Position numbers and translations under genes: made by a program. Below, one piece after another: positions 27,636 through 45,761 of a stretch of 64,000 nucleotides of DNA (its first letter is position 1; the number at the start of each line of letters is the position of its first letter). The stretch covers positions 69,750,001 to 69,814,000 of the forward strand of contig NC_083232.1 of the NCBI RefSeq assembly GCF_032191835.1. The letters are read 5' to 3'. The stretch is from Heteronotia binoei (taxonomy: Eukaryota). The notes below the pieces were generated by a model. It worked only from the letters and a program-made list of their open reading frames with translations, was not told the origin of the DNA and made no database searches.

Positions 27636-29476
27636 CATATAAATCAGTGGACTCCTTTCATCAACTTAATTTATTAACTAATATTATGTATCCCCTGCCT
27701 TCCTCCCCCAAAAGGACGCTGAAGTGGTTTGACACACTCTCCCCTTCTCTTTTATCCTCACAACAAACCTATGAGGTGGGTTAACTCAGTGTATATTACT
27801 GGTCCAAGGTTTCCCAGCAAGCTGCCAGGGCAGAGTGGGCATATGAATCAGGACCTCCCAGATCTGATTTGGACACCCTTACCAGCAGCTCCTACTAAAC
27901 ACACTATATTTTAATGTATTCTTTCTCCCTAATGGTAAACTAGAATGATGTTTAGAATATATGTTACATGTTCAAAAGTAAATTAGTTGGACAGAAACAC
28001 CTCTGGGAAAGGCATGTTCTCAGTTTAACCCAGACTTACAAGCAACAGAGCAATGAACAGCCTCCATTTATTGCCTTATGACACTCTCACCATCATTCTC
28101 CCATTCTGACATGTTACTATTTTGTTGGTTTCCTAAGCAAATGCTATCCAGACCAAATGTTTTTTCTGTTTGTTAATTTCACTATGAGTTGTTTTTTCTA
28201 AACTAAAACCTCAGTATTCAGGTTAAATTGCCTTGTTGGCACTTTGCAATAAATAAGTGGGTTTTGGATTGCAGTTTGGGCACTTGGTCTCTAAAAGGTT
28301 CGCCATCACTGCCCTATGCCATCAACACTCATAGTTATGTGCACAACACCACAGACTTTCTGAGGAAAATACAATCTTTGAAAAATGTTCCAAAGAATAC
28401 TATTTTAGCCACAATGGATGTGGAATCTCTGTATACCAACATCCCACACAAAGATGGATTACAAGCCATAAGGAATATGATTTCTGACAATACCGCAGCT
28501 GACTTTGCCACCAAACTCTGTCATTTTGTTCTCACCCATAACAACTTTAAATTTGGTGACAACTTGATCCTATAGGTCAGTGGTATGACTTTCTCCCCAT
28601 GGGTACCTGCATGGCCCCACAGTATACTAACATCTTTATGGCTGACTTGGAGCAACTCTTCTTAAATTTCCACCTACTCCCACCACTCTTATTCCTATGA
28701 TACATTAATGACATTTTTATTGTCTGGACACATGGTAAAGAAGCCCTGGACATATTCCACCAGGCACTCAATGACTTTCACCCCACTTTCAACCTGACAA
28801 TGAATCAATCTATGCAAGAAATAAATTTCTGAACACTAGTGTAAAAATACACAATGGACGCATAAACATCAGTTATACCTGGAAACTTACTGACTGAGAA
28901 ACATACCTACGTGCCTCCAGCCACCATCCTAAACATATTAAATGATCCATTGTATTAAACTAGGCTCTACACTACAGCCGCACCTGCTCCACTCCTACAG
29001 ACAGAGATTCTCACCTGAGAATCTACAACAAACCTTTTTGGAACTAATGTATCCACCTGATGAAGTCAAGAAACAGATTAACAAGGCTAGAATAGAACCT
29101 AAAGAAAAACTATTGCAAGACAAGCCCAATAGAGACAATAACAGAACACCATTGGAACAGATTTGAGTCCAGTGACACCTTTAAGATCAAGAAGAAGAAT
29201 ATATTGGATTTATATCCCGCCCTCCACGCCGAATAGTCTCACAGCGGCTCACAATCTCCTTTACCTTCCTCCCCCACAACAGACACCCTGTGAGGTGGGT
29301 GGGGCTGGAGAGGGCTCTCACAGCAGCTGCCCTTTCAAGGACAACCTCTGCCAGAGCTATGGCTGACCCAAGGCCATGCCAGCAGGTGCAAGTGGAGGAG
29401 TGGGGAATCAAACCTGGTTCTTCCAGATAAGAGTCTGCACACTTACCTACTACACCAAACTGAAAGTTTATTTAAG

Positions 29477-29514
29477 ATATGAGCTTTCATGTGCATGCAC
29501 ACTTCTTCAGATAC
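29477..29514 (-). ncRNA. Minimal type I hammerhead ribozyme (Penelope pLTR), intact core
   Basis: Minus strand: GUAU CUGAAGA A GUGUGCAUGCACAU GAAA GCU C AUAU. Stem I GUAU/AUAU, self-complementary stem II, palindromic AGCU stem III, CUC cleavage triplet (after 29481). Confidence 0.8.
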
Positions 29515-32500
29515 ACCATTAGTGATTGCATACAGCTCTCAACTCAAAACAGCTCAACCTATCGTCAGTGACTTACAACCTCTGCTGCATAAGTTCTCTT
29601 TCACAAGTACTGAAGGACAAACCTTTTCCTGCATCCAGACAGCCCCCCAATCTCAAACAACTCCTCACCCACATTAATACAACATTTGAACATAGACACA
29701 GATAACAGAGCTTGCAATAAACCCAGATGCCAACTTTGCTGCCACATACACCCAGACAACACAGTCACTGGACCTAACAAAATCAACTACACCATCTCAG
29801 GTGTATTTGCCTGCTCATCTTCTAATATTGTATATGCCATTATATGCCAACAATGTCCCTCTGTTCTCTACATAGGTCAGATCCTACTCCGAAGGATAAC
29901 AGACACAAATATGACAAAAAGAATCACAAAACCAAGAAACCTATAAGAGAACATTTATACCTCCCAGGGCACTCAATTGGTGACCTCAAAGTAGTTTTTT
30001 TTTTATTGCAAAAGACTTTCAGTAGCAGACTGGAACAGGAGACTGCTGAATTACAAGTTATTACAACACTAAGGACAATGGAACTTCCAGGGCTTAATAG
30101 AGATATTGGGCTTTTATCTCACTATACATGCTAAGTCACTCATTTCTCACTTATGCCCTAAATTAAACTTTGTCGGTCTTAAAGGTGCCACAGGACTCAA
30201 ACATCTGTTATTAAGTGCTTTATTATTTGTGTGCCAGTTTGCTGCTATTCACAGATTTTAGCAAGCATGTTATTCCAATCTTAGCTGTATTTATTGCTCA
30301 GTTACTTATTCATCTTAATTATAATCAGCACTTCCTGGCAACTAAGCCTCCCACCTACATGCAACATTTGAGGAAATCTGTTTCAATGTATCTAATGGGA
30401 GACCGCCAAAGGGGACCTCCAATTTCTTTGGGGGGCTCCCACTAGGGATACCAGCCTCAGATTGGGAAATACCTGGAAATTCTGGGGTTTGGGGAAGGGA
30501 GGTATTATGCCATGGAGTCCGCCTTCCAAAGCAGCCATTTGCCTCATATGAACTGATTATCATGGATTTTTTCCCCTAAATGATAGAGCATACCCATCCC
30601 CCGGCAATATGCCTGGTGCAATAGCTTCATTCCGGATGATGTCATCACTCTGGGCACGTCACAGTGTGTCAGGGCTCTTTGGGGGTGGGGCTTTCCCTAC
30701 CAGTCAGCTCCGTGGCAGTAGGTTGGGGCCCCAGAAACCAGGGGAACCCCCACCCCCTGGCAGGAAGTTGGGAACCTACCTGGAGGTTGGCAACCATATC
30801 TCCCATCCAAACACTAACCAGGGCTGACCTTGCTTAGTTTCCAAGATCTGACAAGACTGGGCTATTCTGGGTTGTCCTACCCCTCTGGAATAAGAACTGA
30901 TAGCCTCTGGAACTGTTATCGTTTCTGTAGTTCCAAGCACCTAGCATAACTCCACAAAAACTGACAATCAATCTAGGGAGAAAGGCAACAAAGCAAAGCA
31001 CCCATCAGAAAACTGCTCTGAAGATATCAGAGCTTTGGATTCAATATAAAGCATAGAAAATGAAGGGAGCAGTGAGCTTCAGTACATCCTTCCTGGCATT
31101 GTTTTCCTGGAGTCAGAGTGGCACCTAATGGTTGTAAAGGTGTATTACCAACTCATACATTTTATTTGGGACACGGCCTTGGCTGCAGACCAGCACTTAC
31201 ACAACATCCCGGGAGTCTAAAAAATCGGTGTATAATGACCCAGTGGTGAGGTGGGAGGAAGCTCTCTGTCATGGAGGGGGCAACAGCTAGCACAATAATT
31301 ACTCAGAAATGTTAACGCTGCTCAGAGAGGGCAAGTTACAAATGCTTAAGCTGTCAATTCACGGCAATCAATTCAAGAGTATTCTTTTAAAAATACGATA
31401 TTGAAAGCAGAAATAGCAAAAATGTCAGAGATTAAAAGGCAGCAATGAATAATTAAATGTGAACTTCTGTCTGAGGTTGCATTAATTTCCTCTGTTTGCT
31501 GTAGAGTTCCCGCTAAAATCATGTACTTGAGCACCAGCGTTGGCAGTAGTCTGCTTGCAGGTGTTGATGCCAGCTGAGCACTTTGACAATCATCCACAGA
31601 GCACTTCTAGAATGGGATATGATTTTTGGCCCAAATCTTCACTCAGTTGCTGTTTCACTGCTTGGAAAATGTCATTCTGCAATGATGTTCTTTGGGTGTC
31701 AATCTAAAAGCAATGATGCCAGACTGTAGTCCTATTAACAATGATATAATACCAAAGTACAATAGAGATGGCAAGGATTTTAACTGGCCTAAATAATGTG
31801 TCTAAATAATACGACATAGAACAACATTGTCAAAAGCAACCCTCTTAGGCAGTGTAGAAATGCACCTGCATGTCTATTAAAGTTGGCTACTGTGGGGTTT
31901 TGCAAATAGAGAACTGGACATGCATTGACCTTTTCCAAACCATGCAAATGTTGTAGAGGAGTTGCTGGGCTGGCCCAGCCCCATGGAATGCACAGAAATA
32001 CAACACAGTGTTCTCAGTTAAGGGACCTGAGCTGATTTAAGCATTTTAATTAGCATTTCTGCAAAAAAAAAACCCAACCAAAAAACAATAGCACCCAAGG
32101 TGATTTATTTAACATATTTATTTGCATACAGACAACATTGCCTACTTTCCTGAGTAATAGGGTACCCCAGGGCAGAGCTATCAGGCTGGTTTGGAGGAGA
32201 AAGTGCTGGACTCATGTAATGTTTCTGGTAACATGTGCTATATTTACAAATATACTAGAGTGCAGGTGGAGACAGAGATACATACATCCACACAGGGCAG
32301 CTACTCTGTTGCCCCACATCTGATCCTCAGAAAGATACTGCCCTCCAAACCAGCTCAAAAGATCTTTCTAAACCAAAACATGCTGGCACATATGCTCACC
32401 TCCAGCCATCATCTGGGAGGGGTGACGGGTCACCTTCTTCAAGTTCTCATGGATCAGGACAGAGTTGTCCTAATGACCATTAATAATAACATTTAGTTAT

Positions 32501-35500: not shown

Positions 35501-35956
35501 TTGCTGGAATGATCTTGGGTCAGTCATAACTCTGTCAGAGGCTGTTCTGGAAAGAACAGTTTCTATCAGAGTTCTTAGCCCTACCTACCTCAGGGTGTAT
35601 GTTGTAGGGAGGAGAAGGGAAAGGAGATTGTAAATTGATCTGAGACTCCTTCAGGTAGTGAAGGGCAGGGTATAAATCCAATCTCTTCTTGTTCTTCTTC
35701 ATTGTATCCAGTGAGGTCCCTCTCTTCACCAGAGTTAAAAGTTGAAAGAGGCTTGTCATAGACTTATCGTTGCAGAACCGTAGAGCCGCATGTCTGCCTC
35801 CCACGCTTCGGCCCCTCTCTTCACCAAACACCGTCCTCCCCAGACTCTGTCCCTAAATCTCTGGGAGTTTTCCAACCTAGAATTGGCAACCTTACTTTAT
35901 TTTATTCTCACTTCAACTCTGTCAGGTAGGGTAGTCTGAGACTGTGTGAATTACAT

Positions 35957-36815
35957 CTGAATTACAAGTTATTACAACACTCAGGACAATAAAGCCCCCA
36001 GGGCTTAACAGAGATATTAGTTTCTTATCTCACCACTCATGCTAAGTCACTTAGGTCTCACTTGTACCCAGAAATAAACTTTATTGGTCTTAAAAGTGTC
36101 ATTGGACTCAAACTTAGTTCTTATATCTGTTGGTAACTCTTTTATTATCTATATATCACTTTGCTGCTAGCCACAAATCTTACCGAATGCATTATTCAAA
36201 TCTTAGCTGTCTTTATGGCTGTTACTTCTATTAACTCTTTTATTGTCTGTATGCCAAATTGCTGCTATCCACAATTTTTATCAAATGTGTTATTCCAATC
36301 TTAAGTATATTTATTGCTCAGTTACTTATGCATTTTGACTCTAATTAGGCCTTCCTGGCAACTATCCTTCTCTACCTATATGTAACATTTGAGGGAATAT
36401 ATCTGAAGGAGTGTGCATATCTACATATGCCAAGTCTCTCATTTATTCCTGATACCCAAAATTGAACTTTGTTGGAGATGGCAATGCCTTGGGACTCAAA
36501 TTTTGTCTACACATCTGTTTGTTAACTCTGGTATTTATATGCTAATTTACTGCTATTCACAGATTTTACCAACCACCTTAATCCAATCTCAGCTATTATT
36601 GCTGCCCAGTTACTTATGCATCTTGACTTTAACTAGTCCTTTCCGGGAACTACTACCACCACCACCCCTCCCCCCTTATGTATGTGAGGAAATCTGTTTC
36701 AATGTATCTGAAGAAGTGTGCATGCACATGAAAGCTTATACCTTGAATAAAACTTTGTTGGTCTTGGTGACCCTGGACTCAAGCTTTGTTCTGCTGCTTC
36801 AGACCAACACATGAA
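35957..36815 (+). mobile_element. 5'-truncated Penelope-like element: last ORF codons (stop 36043-36045) plus tandemly repeated 3' UTR/pLTR
   Basis: Roughly 80% identical by eye to 30045-30200 (ELQVITTLRT...GLNRD..LSH..C*). The aaactttgttggtctt-like motif recurs at 36076, 36464 and 36750. Confidence 0.85.
36704..36741 (+). ncRNA. Minimal type I hammerhead ribozyme (Penelope pLTR), intact core
   Basis: GUAU CUGAAGA A GUGUGCAUGCACAU GAAA GCU U AUAC. Perfect 4-bp stem I, palindromic stem III, CUU triplet (after 36737). Confidence 0.8.
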
Positions 36816-36979
36816 TTGTGTGGGGCTTACTTTTGAGTGAACATCCACAGGACTGTGCCCAAGCAGCGCTCTGTTAAACAAAAAACATTATTCTTCTGTG
36901 GTCTGGCTTTGGCCAGCGCACCTGAGCAGTCACAAATGAACACGTAGCTAGTCAGCAGCAATCACTGGAAACTTCAAGC

Positions 36980-37280
36980 GCCTCAACCTGCCTGCAAACC
37001 GACCCGTCACCTCAAAGAGAAAGGAGGAAGACTGCAACGGGACCTTCTGCCAATCAGAAGCGTCGGCGACGGCAGCTGAAACATTCTCAGCCAATGAACA
37101 TCGCCATCGCCGACTGTACGGGTTGCTGCTTGCTCTTTGCGAGAGGTCAGCCGCGGTTGCTGCCGTGAGGAAGGAAGAGGCGAGCGGGAACTGGAGGCTG
37201 TAGGTTGGGGTTCAACGGGGGAGGAGGGGAGTCTCGAGTCCGAGAAGGGGCGGCCTGGGCTTGGCCCCACAGGCTCTGAA
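36980..37280 (+). promoter_or_regulatory. GGCT: GGCT promoter / small CpG island with two CCAAT boxes and probable non-coding exon 1
   Basis: CpG-rich patch with CCAAT at 37050-37054 and 37091-37095, and a donor-like GCC|GTGAGG at 37164/37165. The first coding exon downstream has its own splice acceptor, so it needs an upstream exon. Confidence 0.65.
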
Positions 37281-39400
37281 GAATGGGGAGGAGGGGGCTG
37301 CATATTGCAAGGGGAAGGTGCATTCTTGGAAGGGTAACTTGGTCTCTCGGGAGGGGGTTATATTTGGGACATCTTGGAGGAATCAGTAACCTTGAGGATA
37401 CAGGACATGTGGGAAGGGGTCTGAACAGAAGAGGAGGGGTAGAATTTTTGTGTAGAAAAAGTACTGCCTGTCATGTATAAATTTAATATGATCAGAACTT
37501 CAACTCAACTATCTAATCTAAAGGAGAGGATAAGGGGGGGGGGGAGCTAGTACGGTCCACCAAATAAATAGGCGCATATTCTGGCTTGACTGAATAAACT
37601 AGCCCCAAACATGACAGCCCTCATTAAAGCAATTGGTTTGTAGTTTACTGGGCCTCTACTGAGAAAATTCTCTCCAGAGTGACTTGTGATTGAAGACAAG
37701 AGCATCAGAAGAGATCTGTGTGCCCAGTCTTAAAAAGTGGGATGGTGAAGATGTATGAGAGAAAGCCCTCCCTTGAGAACTGAGAGGTTTTGGCTCAAGA
37801 AATGTTTGGATTCAGAAGGGCAGTTCTTGAGAGCATGTGATAGAATTTGTATGTTTCTGAAACTTTAGATAACGGACATAACAACAATATGGGAATGAGA
37901 ATGCTTAAAAAGGTTTGTGATGATTCTGATAGGAGACATTGGGCAAATTTTAACCAGCTACCTGAAACAAGTGCCAAATGTGCACATTTACATTGACTGT
38001 CTGAAATTTGTGAAATCAAATTAATGGTGATGTGCCCCTTCTTCCCCACAAAAAACCGACAACCACCCAGGGAAATGCAGTTAGTGATTCCTTTACTAGG
38101 TATTGCCAGCCATTCCACAAAAGCACAGTTACAAAGATTCTATGGCTCGATATCTATTCATTTATACCCTGCCTTCTCCCCGGTGGCTTACATTTCTCCC
38201 ACCTAAAGTGACTTACATTGATCTCCTTTTCTCCATTTTATCCTCACAGCAACTCTGTAGGATAAGATAGGCTGAGGGTGTATGACTGGCCAAGGTCACC
38301 CTGGCACTTTCATGGCACAATGGGGCTTTGAACCTTGTTCTATGATGACAAATTGATTTACATTTAGGGTAGGGTTGGCAGGTCCGCTGTGGCCACCAGC
38401 AAGGGATGGGGGAGTAGGGTGGCCAGACCCAGGTTGCGAACTTCTGGAGATTTGGGGATGGAGCCTGGGGAGGACAGGTACCTCAATGGGGTACAATGGC
38501 ACAAACTCCACCCTCCAAAGCACCCATTTTCTCCAAGGAAACTGATCTCTGTAGCCTGGAGATGAGCTGTAATGCAGGAGAATCCCCAAGTCCTACCTGG
38601 AGGCTGGCATCCCTAATTTTGGTTACCATCTTGTCAAAGATGATGGAGATAACTTAGCATTTATATGTTTGAATTGATTCATACTGGAAAGCACTATAGA
38701 TGGAAGGGAGAGGAGTGAAAGCATGGCTAAAGCCTTTGCTGCCTCAGTCAAACTAGATCAAGTCTGATTAGGAAGCAGTTCTTTGGGCCTATCTACACAA
38801 GCTGCACATCACCAAAGGAGAATACTTATCTCCCAAATACCCATTCCTCTGAACCATATAAATTAATATAAATAAAACGATTGATTGAACCAGTGACAAG
38901 AACTGTGCAATACATATTGCAGGGATGATCTCCAGTGCCCATGTTAGTCTCTGGGCAGAGGCATGTTTCATCTTAGATAGGAGCACTTTCTCCTTTCCCT
39001 CTTGCATACACACAAAACTGCTTTTCACTTTTGCACTGCAAACTCCCCAGTCTTTAGCTTGCCTCCTTTTGCACTGCAGGGATACAGTTTGCTTTAGAAT
39101 CTGCAAAACTCCTTCCTCCACTGTAGTTGCTGTTCTAAGAGAGAGCTTTTTGTGTTTCAAGGGTTATTATTAGGTTATTTTCTTCCTAGGGGGAAACGGG
39201 TGGAGAGGAACTCCACCAAGGGACAAGAAATTTCCAAAGCATCAGCAGAGCAGCAAGGAGAAATATTTTGTCCATTAACAGCCTGAACAAAGGTAAATGC
39301 TGAGGCGCTCTGGAAAAACAGCTCAGCGGTATTTTCATAGACCAAGTCCTGCCCTAACAAATAAGTGCACTTTCCTTTCCCCAGAGTTCCTCTCTGGTCG

Positions 39401-39568
39401 ATGGAAACCCTCAAGAATTGTGCTTGTGCTGGATCAGGTGGCAACTTGGGAGACTGTAACTCTAAGGAAAAACATTTCCTCTATTTTGCCTATGGCAGTA
39501 ACTTGTTGCGGGAGAGGATAACATTAAGAAACCCATCTGCAGCTTTTCATGGCATAGGAAAGTTACAG
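39401..39568 (+). CDS. GGCT: Gamma-glutamylcyclotransferase coding exon 1 (exon starts 39385)
   Basis: METLKNCACAGSGGNLGDCNSKEKHFLYFAYGSNLLRERITLRNPSAAFHGIGKLQ matches human FLYFAYGSNLLTERIHLRNPSAAF. Acceptor tttcctttccccag, donor CAG|gttggt. Confidence 0.95.
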
Positions 39569-40849
39569 GTTGGTCCTATTTTTGTTTTTCTTTTTACATA
39601 TGTTGAAGACACTTGGCTATTTAATTTGAGACTGCTGTAAATGGGAGATGTGTGATCATGAACAAATGTTTGCCTAACAAAAAAGGAACTTCTGGGCTTC
39701 TTGAAAAAAGATGGGATAAAAATTTAGTAAATATATAAGGTTACTTTTAATCCTATTGATCTTTTTGCAGTTCTTATAGTGAAAGTAGCTAATAAGATAT
39801 GGTCATTTGGGATTTGAAAGCCAAATATGTTGGCACCTAGAGGGCAACAACACAACTGTTATTAGCTTGCCTGGAGACTGTAAATATACTAAGTGGGGGT
39901 TCTGGATCAGCTTTGGGATCTTAGAATATAGCTCATTTCTGGTAAAGCTGAAGACTGCTTTCAACCTACACAGAAGTTTTACTCCAATTCGGCATTCAGA
40001 CTGGAGGGAATTTTTTCATTTGTTTTTGATTTTTTAGCATCCACGTGAAGCTGTCCCCTAACTGTCCACTCTCCATGTATTCCCCTGCTTTGCATCCATA
40101 ATTTCCAAACATGATTTGATAATGATCTTTTCAAATCACGTTTAAATGCTGTGTGGGACAGGAAAGTTGGTATTGCTGGTTCTACCCACATCTGTCCCAT
40201 TTTCTGCACCACCATAGCCGCCATTTCCCCCACGCCAGTGGAATTTCACAGAGGGTGGTTTTTTTAAAAAAAAATCTAACAGACATGTTGAGCTAGCTTA
40301 AAATTGGTAACTGACTGTTGCTTAATACTATAACTATACATTAATTTCTGTGATTTTTTTAAAAGGCTGAAAAAACCCTACAGTGGCACAGGATGGGGGG
40401 AATGGTGGACATGGGGGCCAGGGACAAGGAAAATGTGGGGGAAACTGACTATATGGACTCCGCATTGCCACTGAGAATGCCTCTGCATTTGCTGCAGCAG
40501 CAGAAGAAGAAGGAAGATGGAAAACTGGCTGTGTGGATGCAGCCAAATAATATTATTCTTTTATATCTTGCATTTTGTTTTATTTGGTCAGTTATCAAAT
40601 TGAAGCTAAATCAGGCACATGACAAGGGAAGTGATTTGTTTGTCCTCTGGTATTCAGCTGATTCTTCATGAACTTTGTTTCAATTAAATCAGTGATAGGA
40701 AGACTGGAAAGGTATCTGTGTGTTGTGATGTTCTATCTCTTGTATTGTTTGTAATATTGTAAGACAGCTGGAATGCTCAGAAAGGATGGGATTGAAACAA
40801 AGCCAGTAAATAAATAGGCAGAGACTGATGGTTTCTATTTAATTCACAG

Positions 40850-45015: not shown

Positions 45016-45761
45016 TGTCATGGGTCAGTCAGGAAGAGAGGAGTCCTGTGTAGTCAGCAGCAGAAGCCGCAAGCAAGAAGAGCAACTGCAGCTTTGTCAA
45101 GAGTTCACAGCTGATGCAGAGCCACCAGCACCTTCCAGCCCTGTTCCAACAGATGAAACCCAGGTGGTTGTTGCCTGCCTTCCAGTTTCACCCACACCCT
45201 TTGAGCTCTAGAGATGAAGGCTTAGAATGGAGCTCCAGAAGAGAAGACAAAGCACATATCTCCTGGCCTGACACCAGCTGCTTGCTCATGATGAGTAGCT
45301 GCGGGGCTACTCCCAAGCAGATGACTACAAGAAAGCCCTTCCAGCAGATGCCTGTAAAAGACTGTATCTGAAGAAGTGTGTGTGTACATACGAAGCTTAT
45401 ACCTTGAATAAAACCTTGTTGGTCTTGCTAGTGGACTGTAACTTCATTCTGTTGCTTTAGACCAACACAGCTGCCCACCTGGATCTATAACAGCCAGTCA
45501 AGGGAGATTGCTCAATGTGGAAGCAACAAATCACCATCCAGTGGACTCCGCAATCAGAGCTCCTGATTCTGCTTGTGACTCCACTCCAGTGACCTTTGAA
45601 CCAGCTTTGGACTTGGATATCAGACCTGCTTGCTCTTGTATGCAACCTTGGACTGCTAGACTTCGCTTTCTGGACCACACTTTGAATTGGCCCTGCTCTT
45701 TGGCAACTAACCCTCTGGACTGAATCTTGACTCTCACTCAACTTGCATCTCAACTGTGACG
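45016..45761 (+). mobile_element. Probable Gypsy-type solo LTR in GGCT intron 3, splitting a 5S-derived SINE
   Basis: Begins TGTCA and ends TGAC(G). The 5S-like sequence ...tacctggatg resumes as gagtgactactaaggaagtcc after it. A TATA-like tataacagcc and gacct/ggac-type internal repeats are present. TSD not clear. Confidence 0.5.
45364..45490 (+). mobile_element. Solo Penelope pLTR with defective hammerhead (GAA instead of GAAA)
   Basis: GUAU CUGAAGA A GUGUGUGUGUACAUAC GAA GCUU AUAC then cttgaataaaaccttgttggtctt...gaccaacacagctgcccacctg, collinear with 36704-36810. Confidence 0.8.

What the first reader, a model, noticed from the sequence alone, without database searches (positions are those of the whole stretch)
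36704..36815. Intact minimal hammerhead ribozyme at the end of a Penelope 3' UTR, ~300 bp upstream of the GGCT promoter and in the sense orientation
Seen: the full core CUGAAGA / GAAA / NUH (CUU) with a perfect stem I (GUAU:AUAC), a self-complementary stem II and a 4-nt palindromic stem III (AGCU). Established: Penelope-like elements carry minimal type I hammerheads with palindromic stem III that cleave as dimers. Inference: this gecko family may still self-cleave and could truncate upstream read-through RNA entering GGCT. The stem II closing pair is G-U here (probable CpG decay of G-C), which may weaken activity.
Basis: partly seen in the sequence, partly recalled or inferred. Interest (0 to 1): 0.75.

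Follow-up and report, generated by a model that had tools for sequence, protein, structure and literature searches.

The report
Relic Penelope retrotransposon hammerhead motif
The small self-cutting-RNA (hammerhead) motif is really there, but it is one ordinary, probably inert copy of the motif carried by a very abundant lizard jumping gene, and nothing links it to control of the neighbouring GGCT gene.

Summary
At 36704-36741 (+) lies a complete minimal type I hammerhead motif: stem I GUAU/AUAC, core CUGAAGA, one extra A, a 5-bp stem II with a CAUG loop, GAA, the palindrome AGCU, then U17. A structural descriptor finds it and one more copy (29481-29510, minus strand) in the window, and none in 200 shuffles. 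It closes the 3' untranslated tail of a 5'-truncated, partly duplicated Penelope-like element (PLE), and homologues of the family's ORF carry RT plus GIY-YIG domains. It lies about 380 bp upstream of, and in the same sense as, a non-coding GGCT first exon; spliced contigs join 37199 to 39385. The G-U pair closing stem II is a decay product, because most other copies of the family read C at 36729. The architecture matches the published PLE "min-HHR" class. The proposed function is not supported. There is no second complete motif in cis. The active dimer fold is predicted to be less stable than its alternatives. Published relatives cleave poorly or need the element's protein. No contig links the element to GGCT. 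This scan already holds 97 notes with these words on this same genome. Verdict: a real feature of a known kind, of low interest.

The parts
36700..36707 (+). Stem I, 5' strand: GUAU (36704-36707), with a possible extension CAA (36700-36702) across a 1x1 mismatch
   Evidence: sequence; fold
36708..36714 (+). Core box CUGAAGA (C3-A9)
36715..36715 (+). Unpaired extra A between A9 and G10.1, a hallmark of published PLE min-HHRs
   Evidence: PMC4209133
36716..36729 (+). Stem II hairpin GUGUG/CACAU with loop CAUG. The whole 14-mer is self-complementary. The closing pair is G10.1-U11.1, and 36729 reads C in most other copies of the family
36730..36737 (+). GAA (G12-A14), the palindrome AGCU (A15.1 to U16.1, a stem III that can form only between two copies) and U17. 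The putative scissile bond is 36737/36738
36738..36745 (+). Stem I, 3' strand: AUAC (plus UUG extension)
36742..36811 (+). Post-hammerhead tail of the element. It holds AATAAA at 36746-36751 and ends in the AC-rich ...CAGACCAACAC. Two other copies run about 25 nt further (an optional tail)
   Evidence: loose-end consensus; PMC11167929
35938..36703 (+). The 5'-truncated PLE fragment that carries the motif. It holds the last ORF codons (about 35957-36050) and a partly duplicated 3' UTR. A half hammerhead at 36402-36420 is joined at loop II to a second copy of the ORF end and 3' UTR
   Evidence: joints 36362->36693
29481..29510 (-). Second complete copy of the same motif. The core and stem II are identical, including U11.1. 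H17 is C, and stem I ends in a G-U pair
45364..45470 (+). Decayed copy of the hammerhead plus tail. Stem II is altered and one A of GAAA is lost. It keeps C before the G12 position
29017..30393 (+). Larger copy of the same PLE family. It holds C-terminal ORF pieces with a zinc-finger-like motif and a GIY-YIG endonuclease motif, and is interrupted at 29158-29503. Its 3' UTR is cut off just as the hammerhead begins (GTATCT at 30388-30393)
37120..37199 (+). Non-coding first exon of GGCT within a CpG-rich stretch (37000-37250). The donor at 37199 is spliced to 39385, or alternatively to 39190
39385..39569 (+). First coding exon of GGCT (...FLYFAYGSNLLRERITLRNPSAAF...)

Best explanation
This is a fossil copy of the minimal type I hammerhead motif that Penelope-like retrotransposons carry in their pseudo-LTR. 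It was laid down as part of a 5'-truncated, partly duplicated PLE insertion spanning about 35938-36811.

In the living family the motif sits about 260 nt after the ORF stop, and about 75-100 nt before the AC-rich site where reverse transcription starts. Its stem III is only the 4-nt palindrome AGCU. A catalytic fold can therefore form only when two copies pair as a double hammerhead, with stems I and III formed between the copies. That would happen in tandem transcripts, or when the element's own protein brings two RNAs together. Cleavage after U17 would then trim the element's RNA.

At this locus the copy is alone on its strand, has lost the G10.1-C11.1 pair to CpG decay, and most likely does nothing. 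Its position about 380 bp upstream of the GGCT first exon is incidental.

What is shown: the motif, its family membership, its location, the decay at 36729 and the GGCT exon structure. What is inferred: the dimeric mechanism (from published relatives) and inactivity at this locus.
For: The motif is complete and non-random. [quoted passage not shown]

It belongs to a PLE. 35957-36709 is homologous to 30046-30393, which follows a GIY-YIG ORF. The ORF fragment has 319 homologues, and the long ones carry RVT_1 plus GIY-YIG.

The family is very abundant. The summed contig depth over 36662-36788 is 3 to 5 orders of magnitude above the unique flanks in four runs. This scan holds 97 notes with these words on this genome.

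C is the majority letter at 36729. The copy ends at an AC-rich site, while two other copies carry a further ~25-nt tail. This fits the two RT start sites described for the anole PLE (PMC11167929).

There is no complete partner on the + strand. The active dimer fold is not favoured. No contig bridges the element and GGCT exon 1.
Against: No cleavage assay or raw-read end mapping was possible, because all available runs were contigs, which cannot show RNA ends. The core itself is fully intact, and a G-U pair still offers G10.1, so residual activity in trans with other abundant PLE transcripts cannot be excluded. Nearest-neighbour energies ignore the tertiary contacts of the hammerhead core and any help from protein. 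Rfam hammerhead models do not recognise the motif, so its classification rests on a descriptor and on the literature.
Confidence: 0.85

Rival explanations
1. The motif is still catalytically competent. By pairing in trans with other PLE transcripts, it cuts read-through RNA coming from upstream and so shields the GGCT promoter.
For: All core nucleotides are intact and the motif is in the same sense as GGCT. RNA contigs of the family are abundant (X1), so partner RNAs may exist. Dimeric cleavage by such motifs has been reported (PMC4209133; Lunse et al. 2017 as cited in PMC6765202).
Against: There is no cis partner. The G10.1-C11.1 pair is lost. The double-hammerhead fold is less stable than two monomers, and far less stable than an inactive duplex made through the palindromic stem II. 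Published in vitro activity is low, even for dimers. No contig covers 36916-37042. No upstream + strand transcript was shown. An AATAAA 8 nt downstream of the putative cleavage site (36746-36751) could end such RNA by ordinary polyadenylation.
Confidence: 0.05
2. In this PLE family the conserved motif serves mainly as an RNA structure rather than as a cutter. It would act as a protein-binding or template-switch hairpin. The hammerhead-like core would then be retained for folding or for a rare, protein-assisted cut.
For: The upstream unit breaks off exactly in loop II of the motif and continues with another copy of the ORF end (36417-36421). In the anole PLE, hammerhead mutants did not affect insertion in vitro, cleavage needed the protein, and no RNA-seq ends were seen at the cut site.
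Against: The exact catalytic boxes and the palindromic stem III are kept across PLEs of many phyla, and plant and fungal PLEs have fully canonical, active hammerheads. One junction in this window is an anecdote.
Confidence: 0.1
3. The motif is a chance resemblance to the hammerhead consensus in AT-rich repeat DNA.
For: No Rfam hammerhead family matches, even at E<=10. The monomer fold is no better than shuffles (z = -0.36).
Against: There were 0 hits in 200 shuffles against 2 observed. The 30-nt core is identical in a second copy. The motif sits at a fixed position in a PLE tail. Extra class features that were not part of the search are also met.
Confidence: 0.01

Closest known systems
Minimal hammerhead motifs (min-HHR) of metazoan Penelope-like elements (Cervera & De la Pena 2014, PMC4209133; Lunse, Weinberg & Breaker 2017, cited in PMC6765202)
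   Same: Type I topology. It has no stem III of its own, only the palindrome A15.1-G-C-U16.1. An unpaired nucleotide lies between A9 and G10.1. Stem I is short at 4 bp. The motif sits in the PLE flanking repeat and has a very high copy number. Reptile genomes were already reported to hold such motifs.
   Different: Stem II is 5 bp here, against 7-8 bp in the fluke families. This copy has G10.1-U11.1 instead of the nearly universal G-C, although the family majority has C. No gecko family was named in the papers I read.
Hammerhead of Poseidon_Ac (PAc), the anole PLE studied in vitro (PMC11167929)
   Same: A squamate PLE with the same layout: the end of the 3' UTR, then the hammerhead, then an AC-rich reverse-transcription start about 100 nt further on, with an optional tail. 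It also has an extra nucleotide after A9 and a 4-nt palindrome (ACGU there, AGCU here). An ATG lies inside the stem II region in both.
   Different: The sequences are unrelated (CUGAGGA-U-GCCUGCC... there). The endonuclease region here has a Cys-rich motif before GIY-YIG and looks like another PLE clade. That was not resolved. Whether the ORF of this family really starts in loop II was not shown.
Newt satellite 2, Schistosoma Sm-alpha and cave-cricket type I hammerheads, and metazoan non-LTR retrozymes (PMC7229834; bioRxiv 10.64898/2026.07.22.740005)
   Same: A weak, palindromic stem III and dependence on a double-hammerhead. The bioRxiv preprint argues that they derive from PLE flanking repeats.
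   Different: Those occur as tandem arrays of complete motifs, with canonical loop-loop contacts, and they make circular RNAs. Here the neighbouring unit has only half a motif, so no array of complete ribozymes exists at this locus.

Membership tests
Hammerhead ribozyme (catalytic motif) | Conserved core C3 U4 G5 A6 N7 G8 A9 ... G12 A13 A14, with a cleavage triplet N-U-H | tested here: met
   CUGAAGA at 36708-36714, GAA at 36730-36732, and C-U-U at 36735-36737
Hammerhead ribozyme (catalytic motif) | Three helices around the core | tested here: inconclusive
   Stems I and II form in the monomer. Stem III exists only as an intermolecular AGCU/AGCU duplex. That dimer fold scores -10.1 kcal/mol, against -14.8 for two monomers.
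Hammerhead ribozyme (catalytic motif) | G10.1-C11.1 closing pair of stem II | tested here: not met
   The pair is G-U in this copy (36716/36729). Other copies of the family mostly read C at 36729.
Hammerhead ribozyme (catalytic motif) | Match to a curated Rfam hammerhead covariance model | tested here: not met
   No hit at gathering score or at E<=10. These models expect a real stem III.
Hammerhead ribozyme (catalytic motif) | Site-specific self-cleavage | not testable with these tools
   Only contigs were available, and these cannot show RNA ends.
PLE min-HHR class (Cervera & De la Pena 2014) | [quoted passage not shown] | tested here: met
   A at 36715. The criterion is in PMC4209133.
PLE min-HHR class (Cervera & De la Pena 2014) | Palindromic positions 15.2-16.2 and no independent stem III | tested here: met
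   AGCU at 36733-36736
PLE min-HHR class (Cervera & De la Pena 2014) | Location in the flanking repeat (pLTR) of a PLE | tested here: met
   The motif follows the 3' UTR that is homologous to 30131-30393, downstream of a GIY-YIG ORF.
PLE min-HHR class (Cervera & De la Pena 2014) | A large family of copies within the genome | tested here: met
   There are two intact copies and two decayed copies in 64 kb. The contig depth is huge. The scan holds 97 notes with these words on this genome (unchecked notes).
Penelope-like element | [quoted passage not shown] | tested here: inconclusive
   Only broken C-terminal (endonuclease) pieces are present in the window (29017-30131). Pfam misses them directly. 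Their homologues have RVT_1 plus GIY-YIG. No RT part was found in the window.
Penelope-like element | A 3' end at an internal AC-rich RT start, with an optional ~30-nt tail | tested here: met
   This copy ends at ...CAGACCAACAC (36811). Copies 45364 and 51410(-) continue about 25 nt. The criterion is from PMC11167929.
Non-LTR retrozyme | A tandem array of units that each carry a complete hammerhead | tested here: not met
   The upstream unit has only the 5' half of the motif (36402-36420), then jumps to ORF-end sequence.

The most novel reading that the evidence does not exclude
The single, slightly decayed motif still cleaves. It would pair in trans with the abundant transcripts of the same PLE family, possibly helped by PLE protein. 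It would then act as a ribozyme-based insulator that cuts upstream read-through RNA just before the GGCT promoter.
Probability: 0.03. Interest if true: 0.7.

Novelty: new member of a known kind. Interest (0 to 1): 0.1.

Why it matters
It matters little in itself. The copy documents one more squamate PLE family with the published dimer-dependent minimal hammerhead. It gives a clean example of CpG decay hitting the one CpG inside the motif (C11.1-G12). The practical value is for annotation. Such motifs are everywhere in this genome and should be masked as PLE tails, not scored as candidate regulatory ribozymes. Rfam models will not flag them.

Tried and rejected
Rfam searches at three stringencies found no hammerhead.

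Pfam on the window's own ORF pieces found nothing. The PLE assignment therefore had to go through homologues.

My first dimer structure was pseudoknotted and gave a meaningless energy. It was corrected.

I tested whether the stretch after the ATG in loop II (36722) is the N-terminus of the PLE protein, as in the anole element. blastp against the 150 homologues gave nothing, and the other copies have stops in that frame. This stays an untested analogy.

I looked for a target-site duplication around 35938 and 36811 and found none convincing.

The Lunse et al. 2017 paper is not held in the library, so it is cited only through a review.

Sequencing runs were all Logan contigs with small shares. 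RNA ends, strand and level could therefore not be read.

Full report
**What is in the sequence.**

Window 36704-36741 (+) reads GUAU-CUGAAGA-A-GUGUGCAUGCACAU-GAA-AGCU-U-AUAC. It holds every invariant hammerhead core position:
- C3 to A9 at 36708-36714;
- G12 to A14 at 36730-36732;
- A15.1 and U16.1 at the ends of the palindrome AGCU (36733-36736);
- H17 = U at 36737.

Stem I is 4 bp and can be extended by CAA/UUG across one mismatch. Stem II is 5 bp closed by a CAUG loop.

The motif is not a chance match:
- A loose pattern finds 2 matches, where 0.15 are expected.
- A structural descriptor of my own finds exactly two hits in the window (36708 + and 29481 -) and none in 200 dinucleotide-preserving shuffles. 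It requires both core boxes, stem I and stem II of at least 4 bp, a complementary 15.2/16.2 pair and U-H.

No Rfam hammerhead model matches at any stringency. This is expected for a motif without a stem III of its own, but it means that curated models do not vouch for it.

**What it belongs to.**

The 750 bases upstream (35957-36709) are homologous to 30046-30393. That second stretch directly follows broken + strand ORF pieces at 29614-30131. These carry a Cys-rich motif, then ...NIVYAIICQQC...YIGQ..., and end in ...PGLNRDIGLLSHY.

Pfam does not recognise these short pieces. A full HMMER search with 29614-29943 found 319 homologues. The long ones have RVT_1 plus GIY-YIG, the architecture that defines Penelope-like elements. 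tblastn shows the same ORF continuing at 29017-29157, on the other side of an inserted block.

The copy that carries the finding is 5'-truncated and internally duplicated. One unit runs from the ORF end (about 35957) through the 3' UTR into the 5' half of a hammerhead (36402-36420). It breaks off in loop II and continues with a second ORF-end-plus-3'-UTR unit. That second unit ends in the complete motif and its tail. Contig joints 36362->36693 show that the canonical element lacks the duplication.

The insertion ends at the AC-rich ...CAGACCAACAC (about 36811). The decayed copies at 45364 (+) and 51410 (-) run about 25 nt further. This matches the anole PLE Poseidon_Ac, which has two reverse-transcription start sites in an AC-rich stem-loop and an optional "tail" (PMC11167929).

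**Family-level evidence.**

Contigs of four public runs were laid on 35900-39700 at 85% likeness or more. The summed depth over 36662-36788 is 12,627 / 3,379 / 2,716 / 688,953. The depth over the unique flanks is 0 to a few tens. The family is therefore extremely abundant.

In the part of the difference table that was shown, only one difference falls inside the motif (58 weaker-supported rows were withheld). It is 36729 T>C, carried by 79%, 98% and 93% of the depth in the three runs of organism A, and by 46% in the fourth run. The ancestral stem II thus closed with the canonical G10.1-C11.1. The copy at 29481 has decayed in the same way.

After 36765 the family continues AAAGGTGCCACTGGACTC..., seen in 860 loose ends in one run. 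The window copy has diverged from it at that point.

This scan already holds 97 notes with these words on this same genome. Its follow-ups call the element abundant and ordinary. I used these as leads only.

**Relation to GGCT.**

One search places the exon encoding ...FLYFAYGSNLLRERITLRNPSAAF... at about 39485 (+). Contig 19 of run X3 covers 37120-37199 and 39385-39569 with no differences, joined across a GT..AG gap. X1 and X2 show an alternative acceptor at 39190.

The CpG-rich stretch at 37000-37250 (GC 0.60, CpG o/e 0.93) therefore holds a non-coding GGCT first exon. No contig of any run covers 36916-37042, so nothing links the element to the GGCT transcript. Contigs cannot prove absence.

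**How it works, and whether it works here.**

The architecture is that of the published PLE "min-HHR" class. That class has an unpaired base after A9, a palindromic 15.2-16.2 pair, a short stem I and a location in the flanking repeat. Reptiles were already listed as carriers (PMC4209133).

With only AGCU as stem III, an active site can form only as a double hammerhead. Two copies pair through AGCU/AGCU, and each core holds the other copy's cleavage site through intermolecular stem I.

For the natural 46-mer, the predicted energies are:

| Conformation | Energy (kcal/mol) |
|---|---|
| Double hammerhead (active) | -10.1 |
| Two separate monomers | -14.8 |
| Extended duplex through the self-complementary stem II (inactive) | -31.8 |

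With C at 36729, as most copies read, the values are -14.5, -17.8 and -34.8. These energies ignore tertiary contacts.

They agree with the literature:
- Fluke and fly min-HHRs cleave weakly, even as dimers.
- The anole PLE hammerhead needed its own protein.
- Its catalytic mutants did not affect insertion in vitro.
- The authors found no RNA-seq ends at the cut site.

At this locus there is no complete second motif on the + strand. The nearest + strand relatives are a half motif 300 bp upstream and a decayed copy 8.6 kb downstream. The other intact copy is on the minus strand, 7.2 kb away.

I therefore read the copy as an inert relic (confidence 0.85). An AATAAA 8 nt after the putative cut site (36746-36751) is conserved in the other copies. 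It would be a simpler way to end any read-through RNA, but I did not test this.

**Comparison and novelty.**

The closest known things are:
- the PLE min-HHR class;
- the Poseidon_Ac hammerhead, which has the same layout but an unrelated sequence (CUGAGGA-U-GCCUGCC...GAAACGUC);
- more distantly, the newt and Schistosoma type I motifs and the metazoan retrozymes, which a 2026 preprint derives from PLE flanking repeats.

It is not a retrozyme array, because the neighbouring unit lacks the 3' half of the motif.

The finding is a new member of a known kind and of low interest (0.1).

Noticed in passing
window 36402-36421: The upstream repeat unit carries only the 5' half of the hammerhead (TATCTGAAGGAGTGTGCAT). 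It then switches, inside loop II, to sequence homologous to the end of the PLE ORF (30115 onward). The stem II hairpin looks like a breakpoint or template-switch site.
   Followed up: partly
window 36738-36790 versus 30150-30200 and 36061-36121: The ~55 nt that follow the hammerhead cut site (TTATACCTTGAATAAAACTTTGTTGGTCTT...GGACTCAA) recur right after the ORF stop codon of the same element, at about 75-78% identity in my BLAST comparison. This is an internal duplication within the family's 3' region. Its meaning is unknown.
   Followed up: partly
window 36746-36751 (also 45407, 29470 minus): A canonical AATAAA followed by a GT-rich stretch lies 8 nt after the putative cleavage site and is kept in other copies. 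It may be a polyadenylation signal inside the element's tail.
   Followed up: no
window 36722-36811: From the ATG in loop II the frame stays open to the end of the copy (MHMKAYTLNKTLLVL...). In the anole PLE the ORF starts inside the hammerhead. No homologue confirmed this here.
   Followed up: partly
window 29158-29503: The PLE ORF at 29017-30131 (+) is interrupted by a block that holds a tRNA-like SINE and an antisense hammerhead-plus-short-tail mini-copy (29463-29515, minus strand).
   Followed up: partly
window 37199 -> 39385 and 37199 -> 39190: The GGCT gene has a non-coding first exon ending at 37199. Two alternative acceptors are seen in spliced contigs. Runs X2 and X3, labelled 'DNA?', behave as transcriptomes.
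   Followed up: yes
proteins P0001, P0002, P0008 (public predictions): Public gene models fuse PLE GIY-YIG fragments to host domains (CARD; MROH2B-like HEAT repeats). These are probably mis-annotations in which intronic PLE pieces were taken for exons.
   Followed up: no
window 38439-38615: A second, unrelated and very abundant repeat lies in GGCT intron 1 (summed contig depth up to about 850,000 in X4).
   Followed up: no
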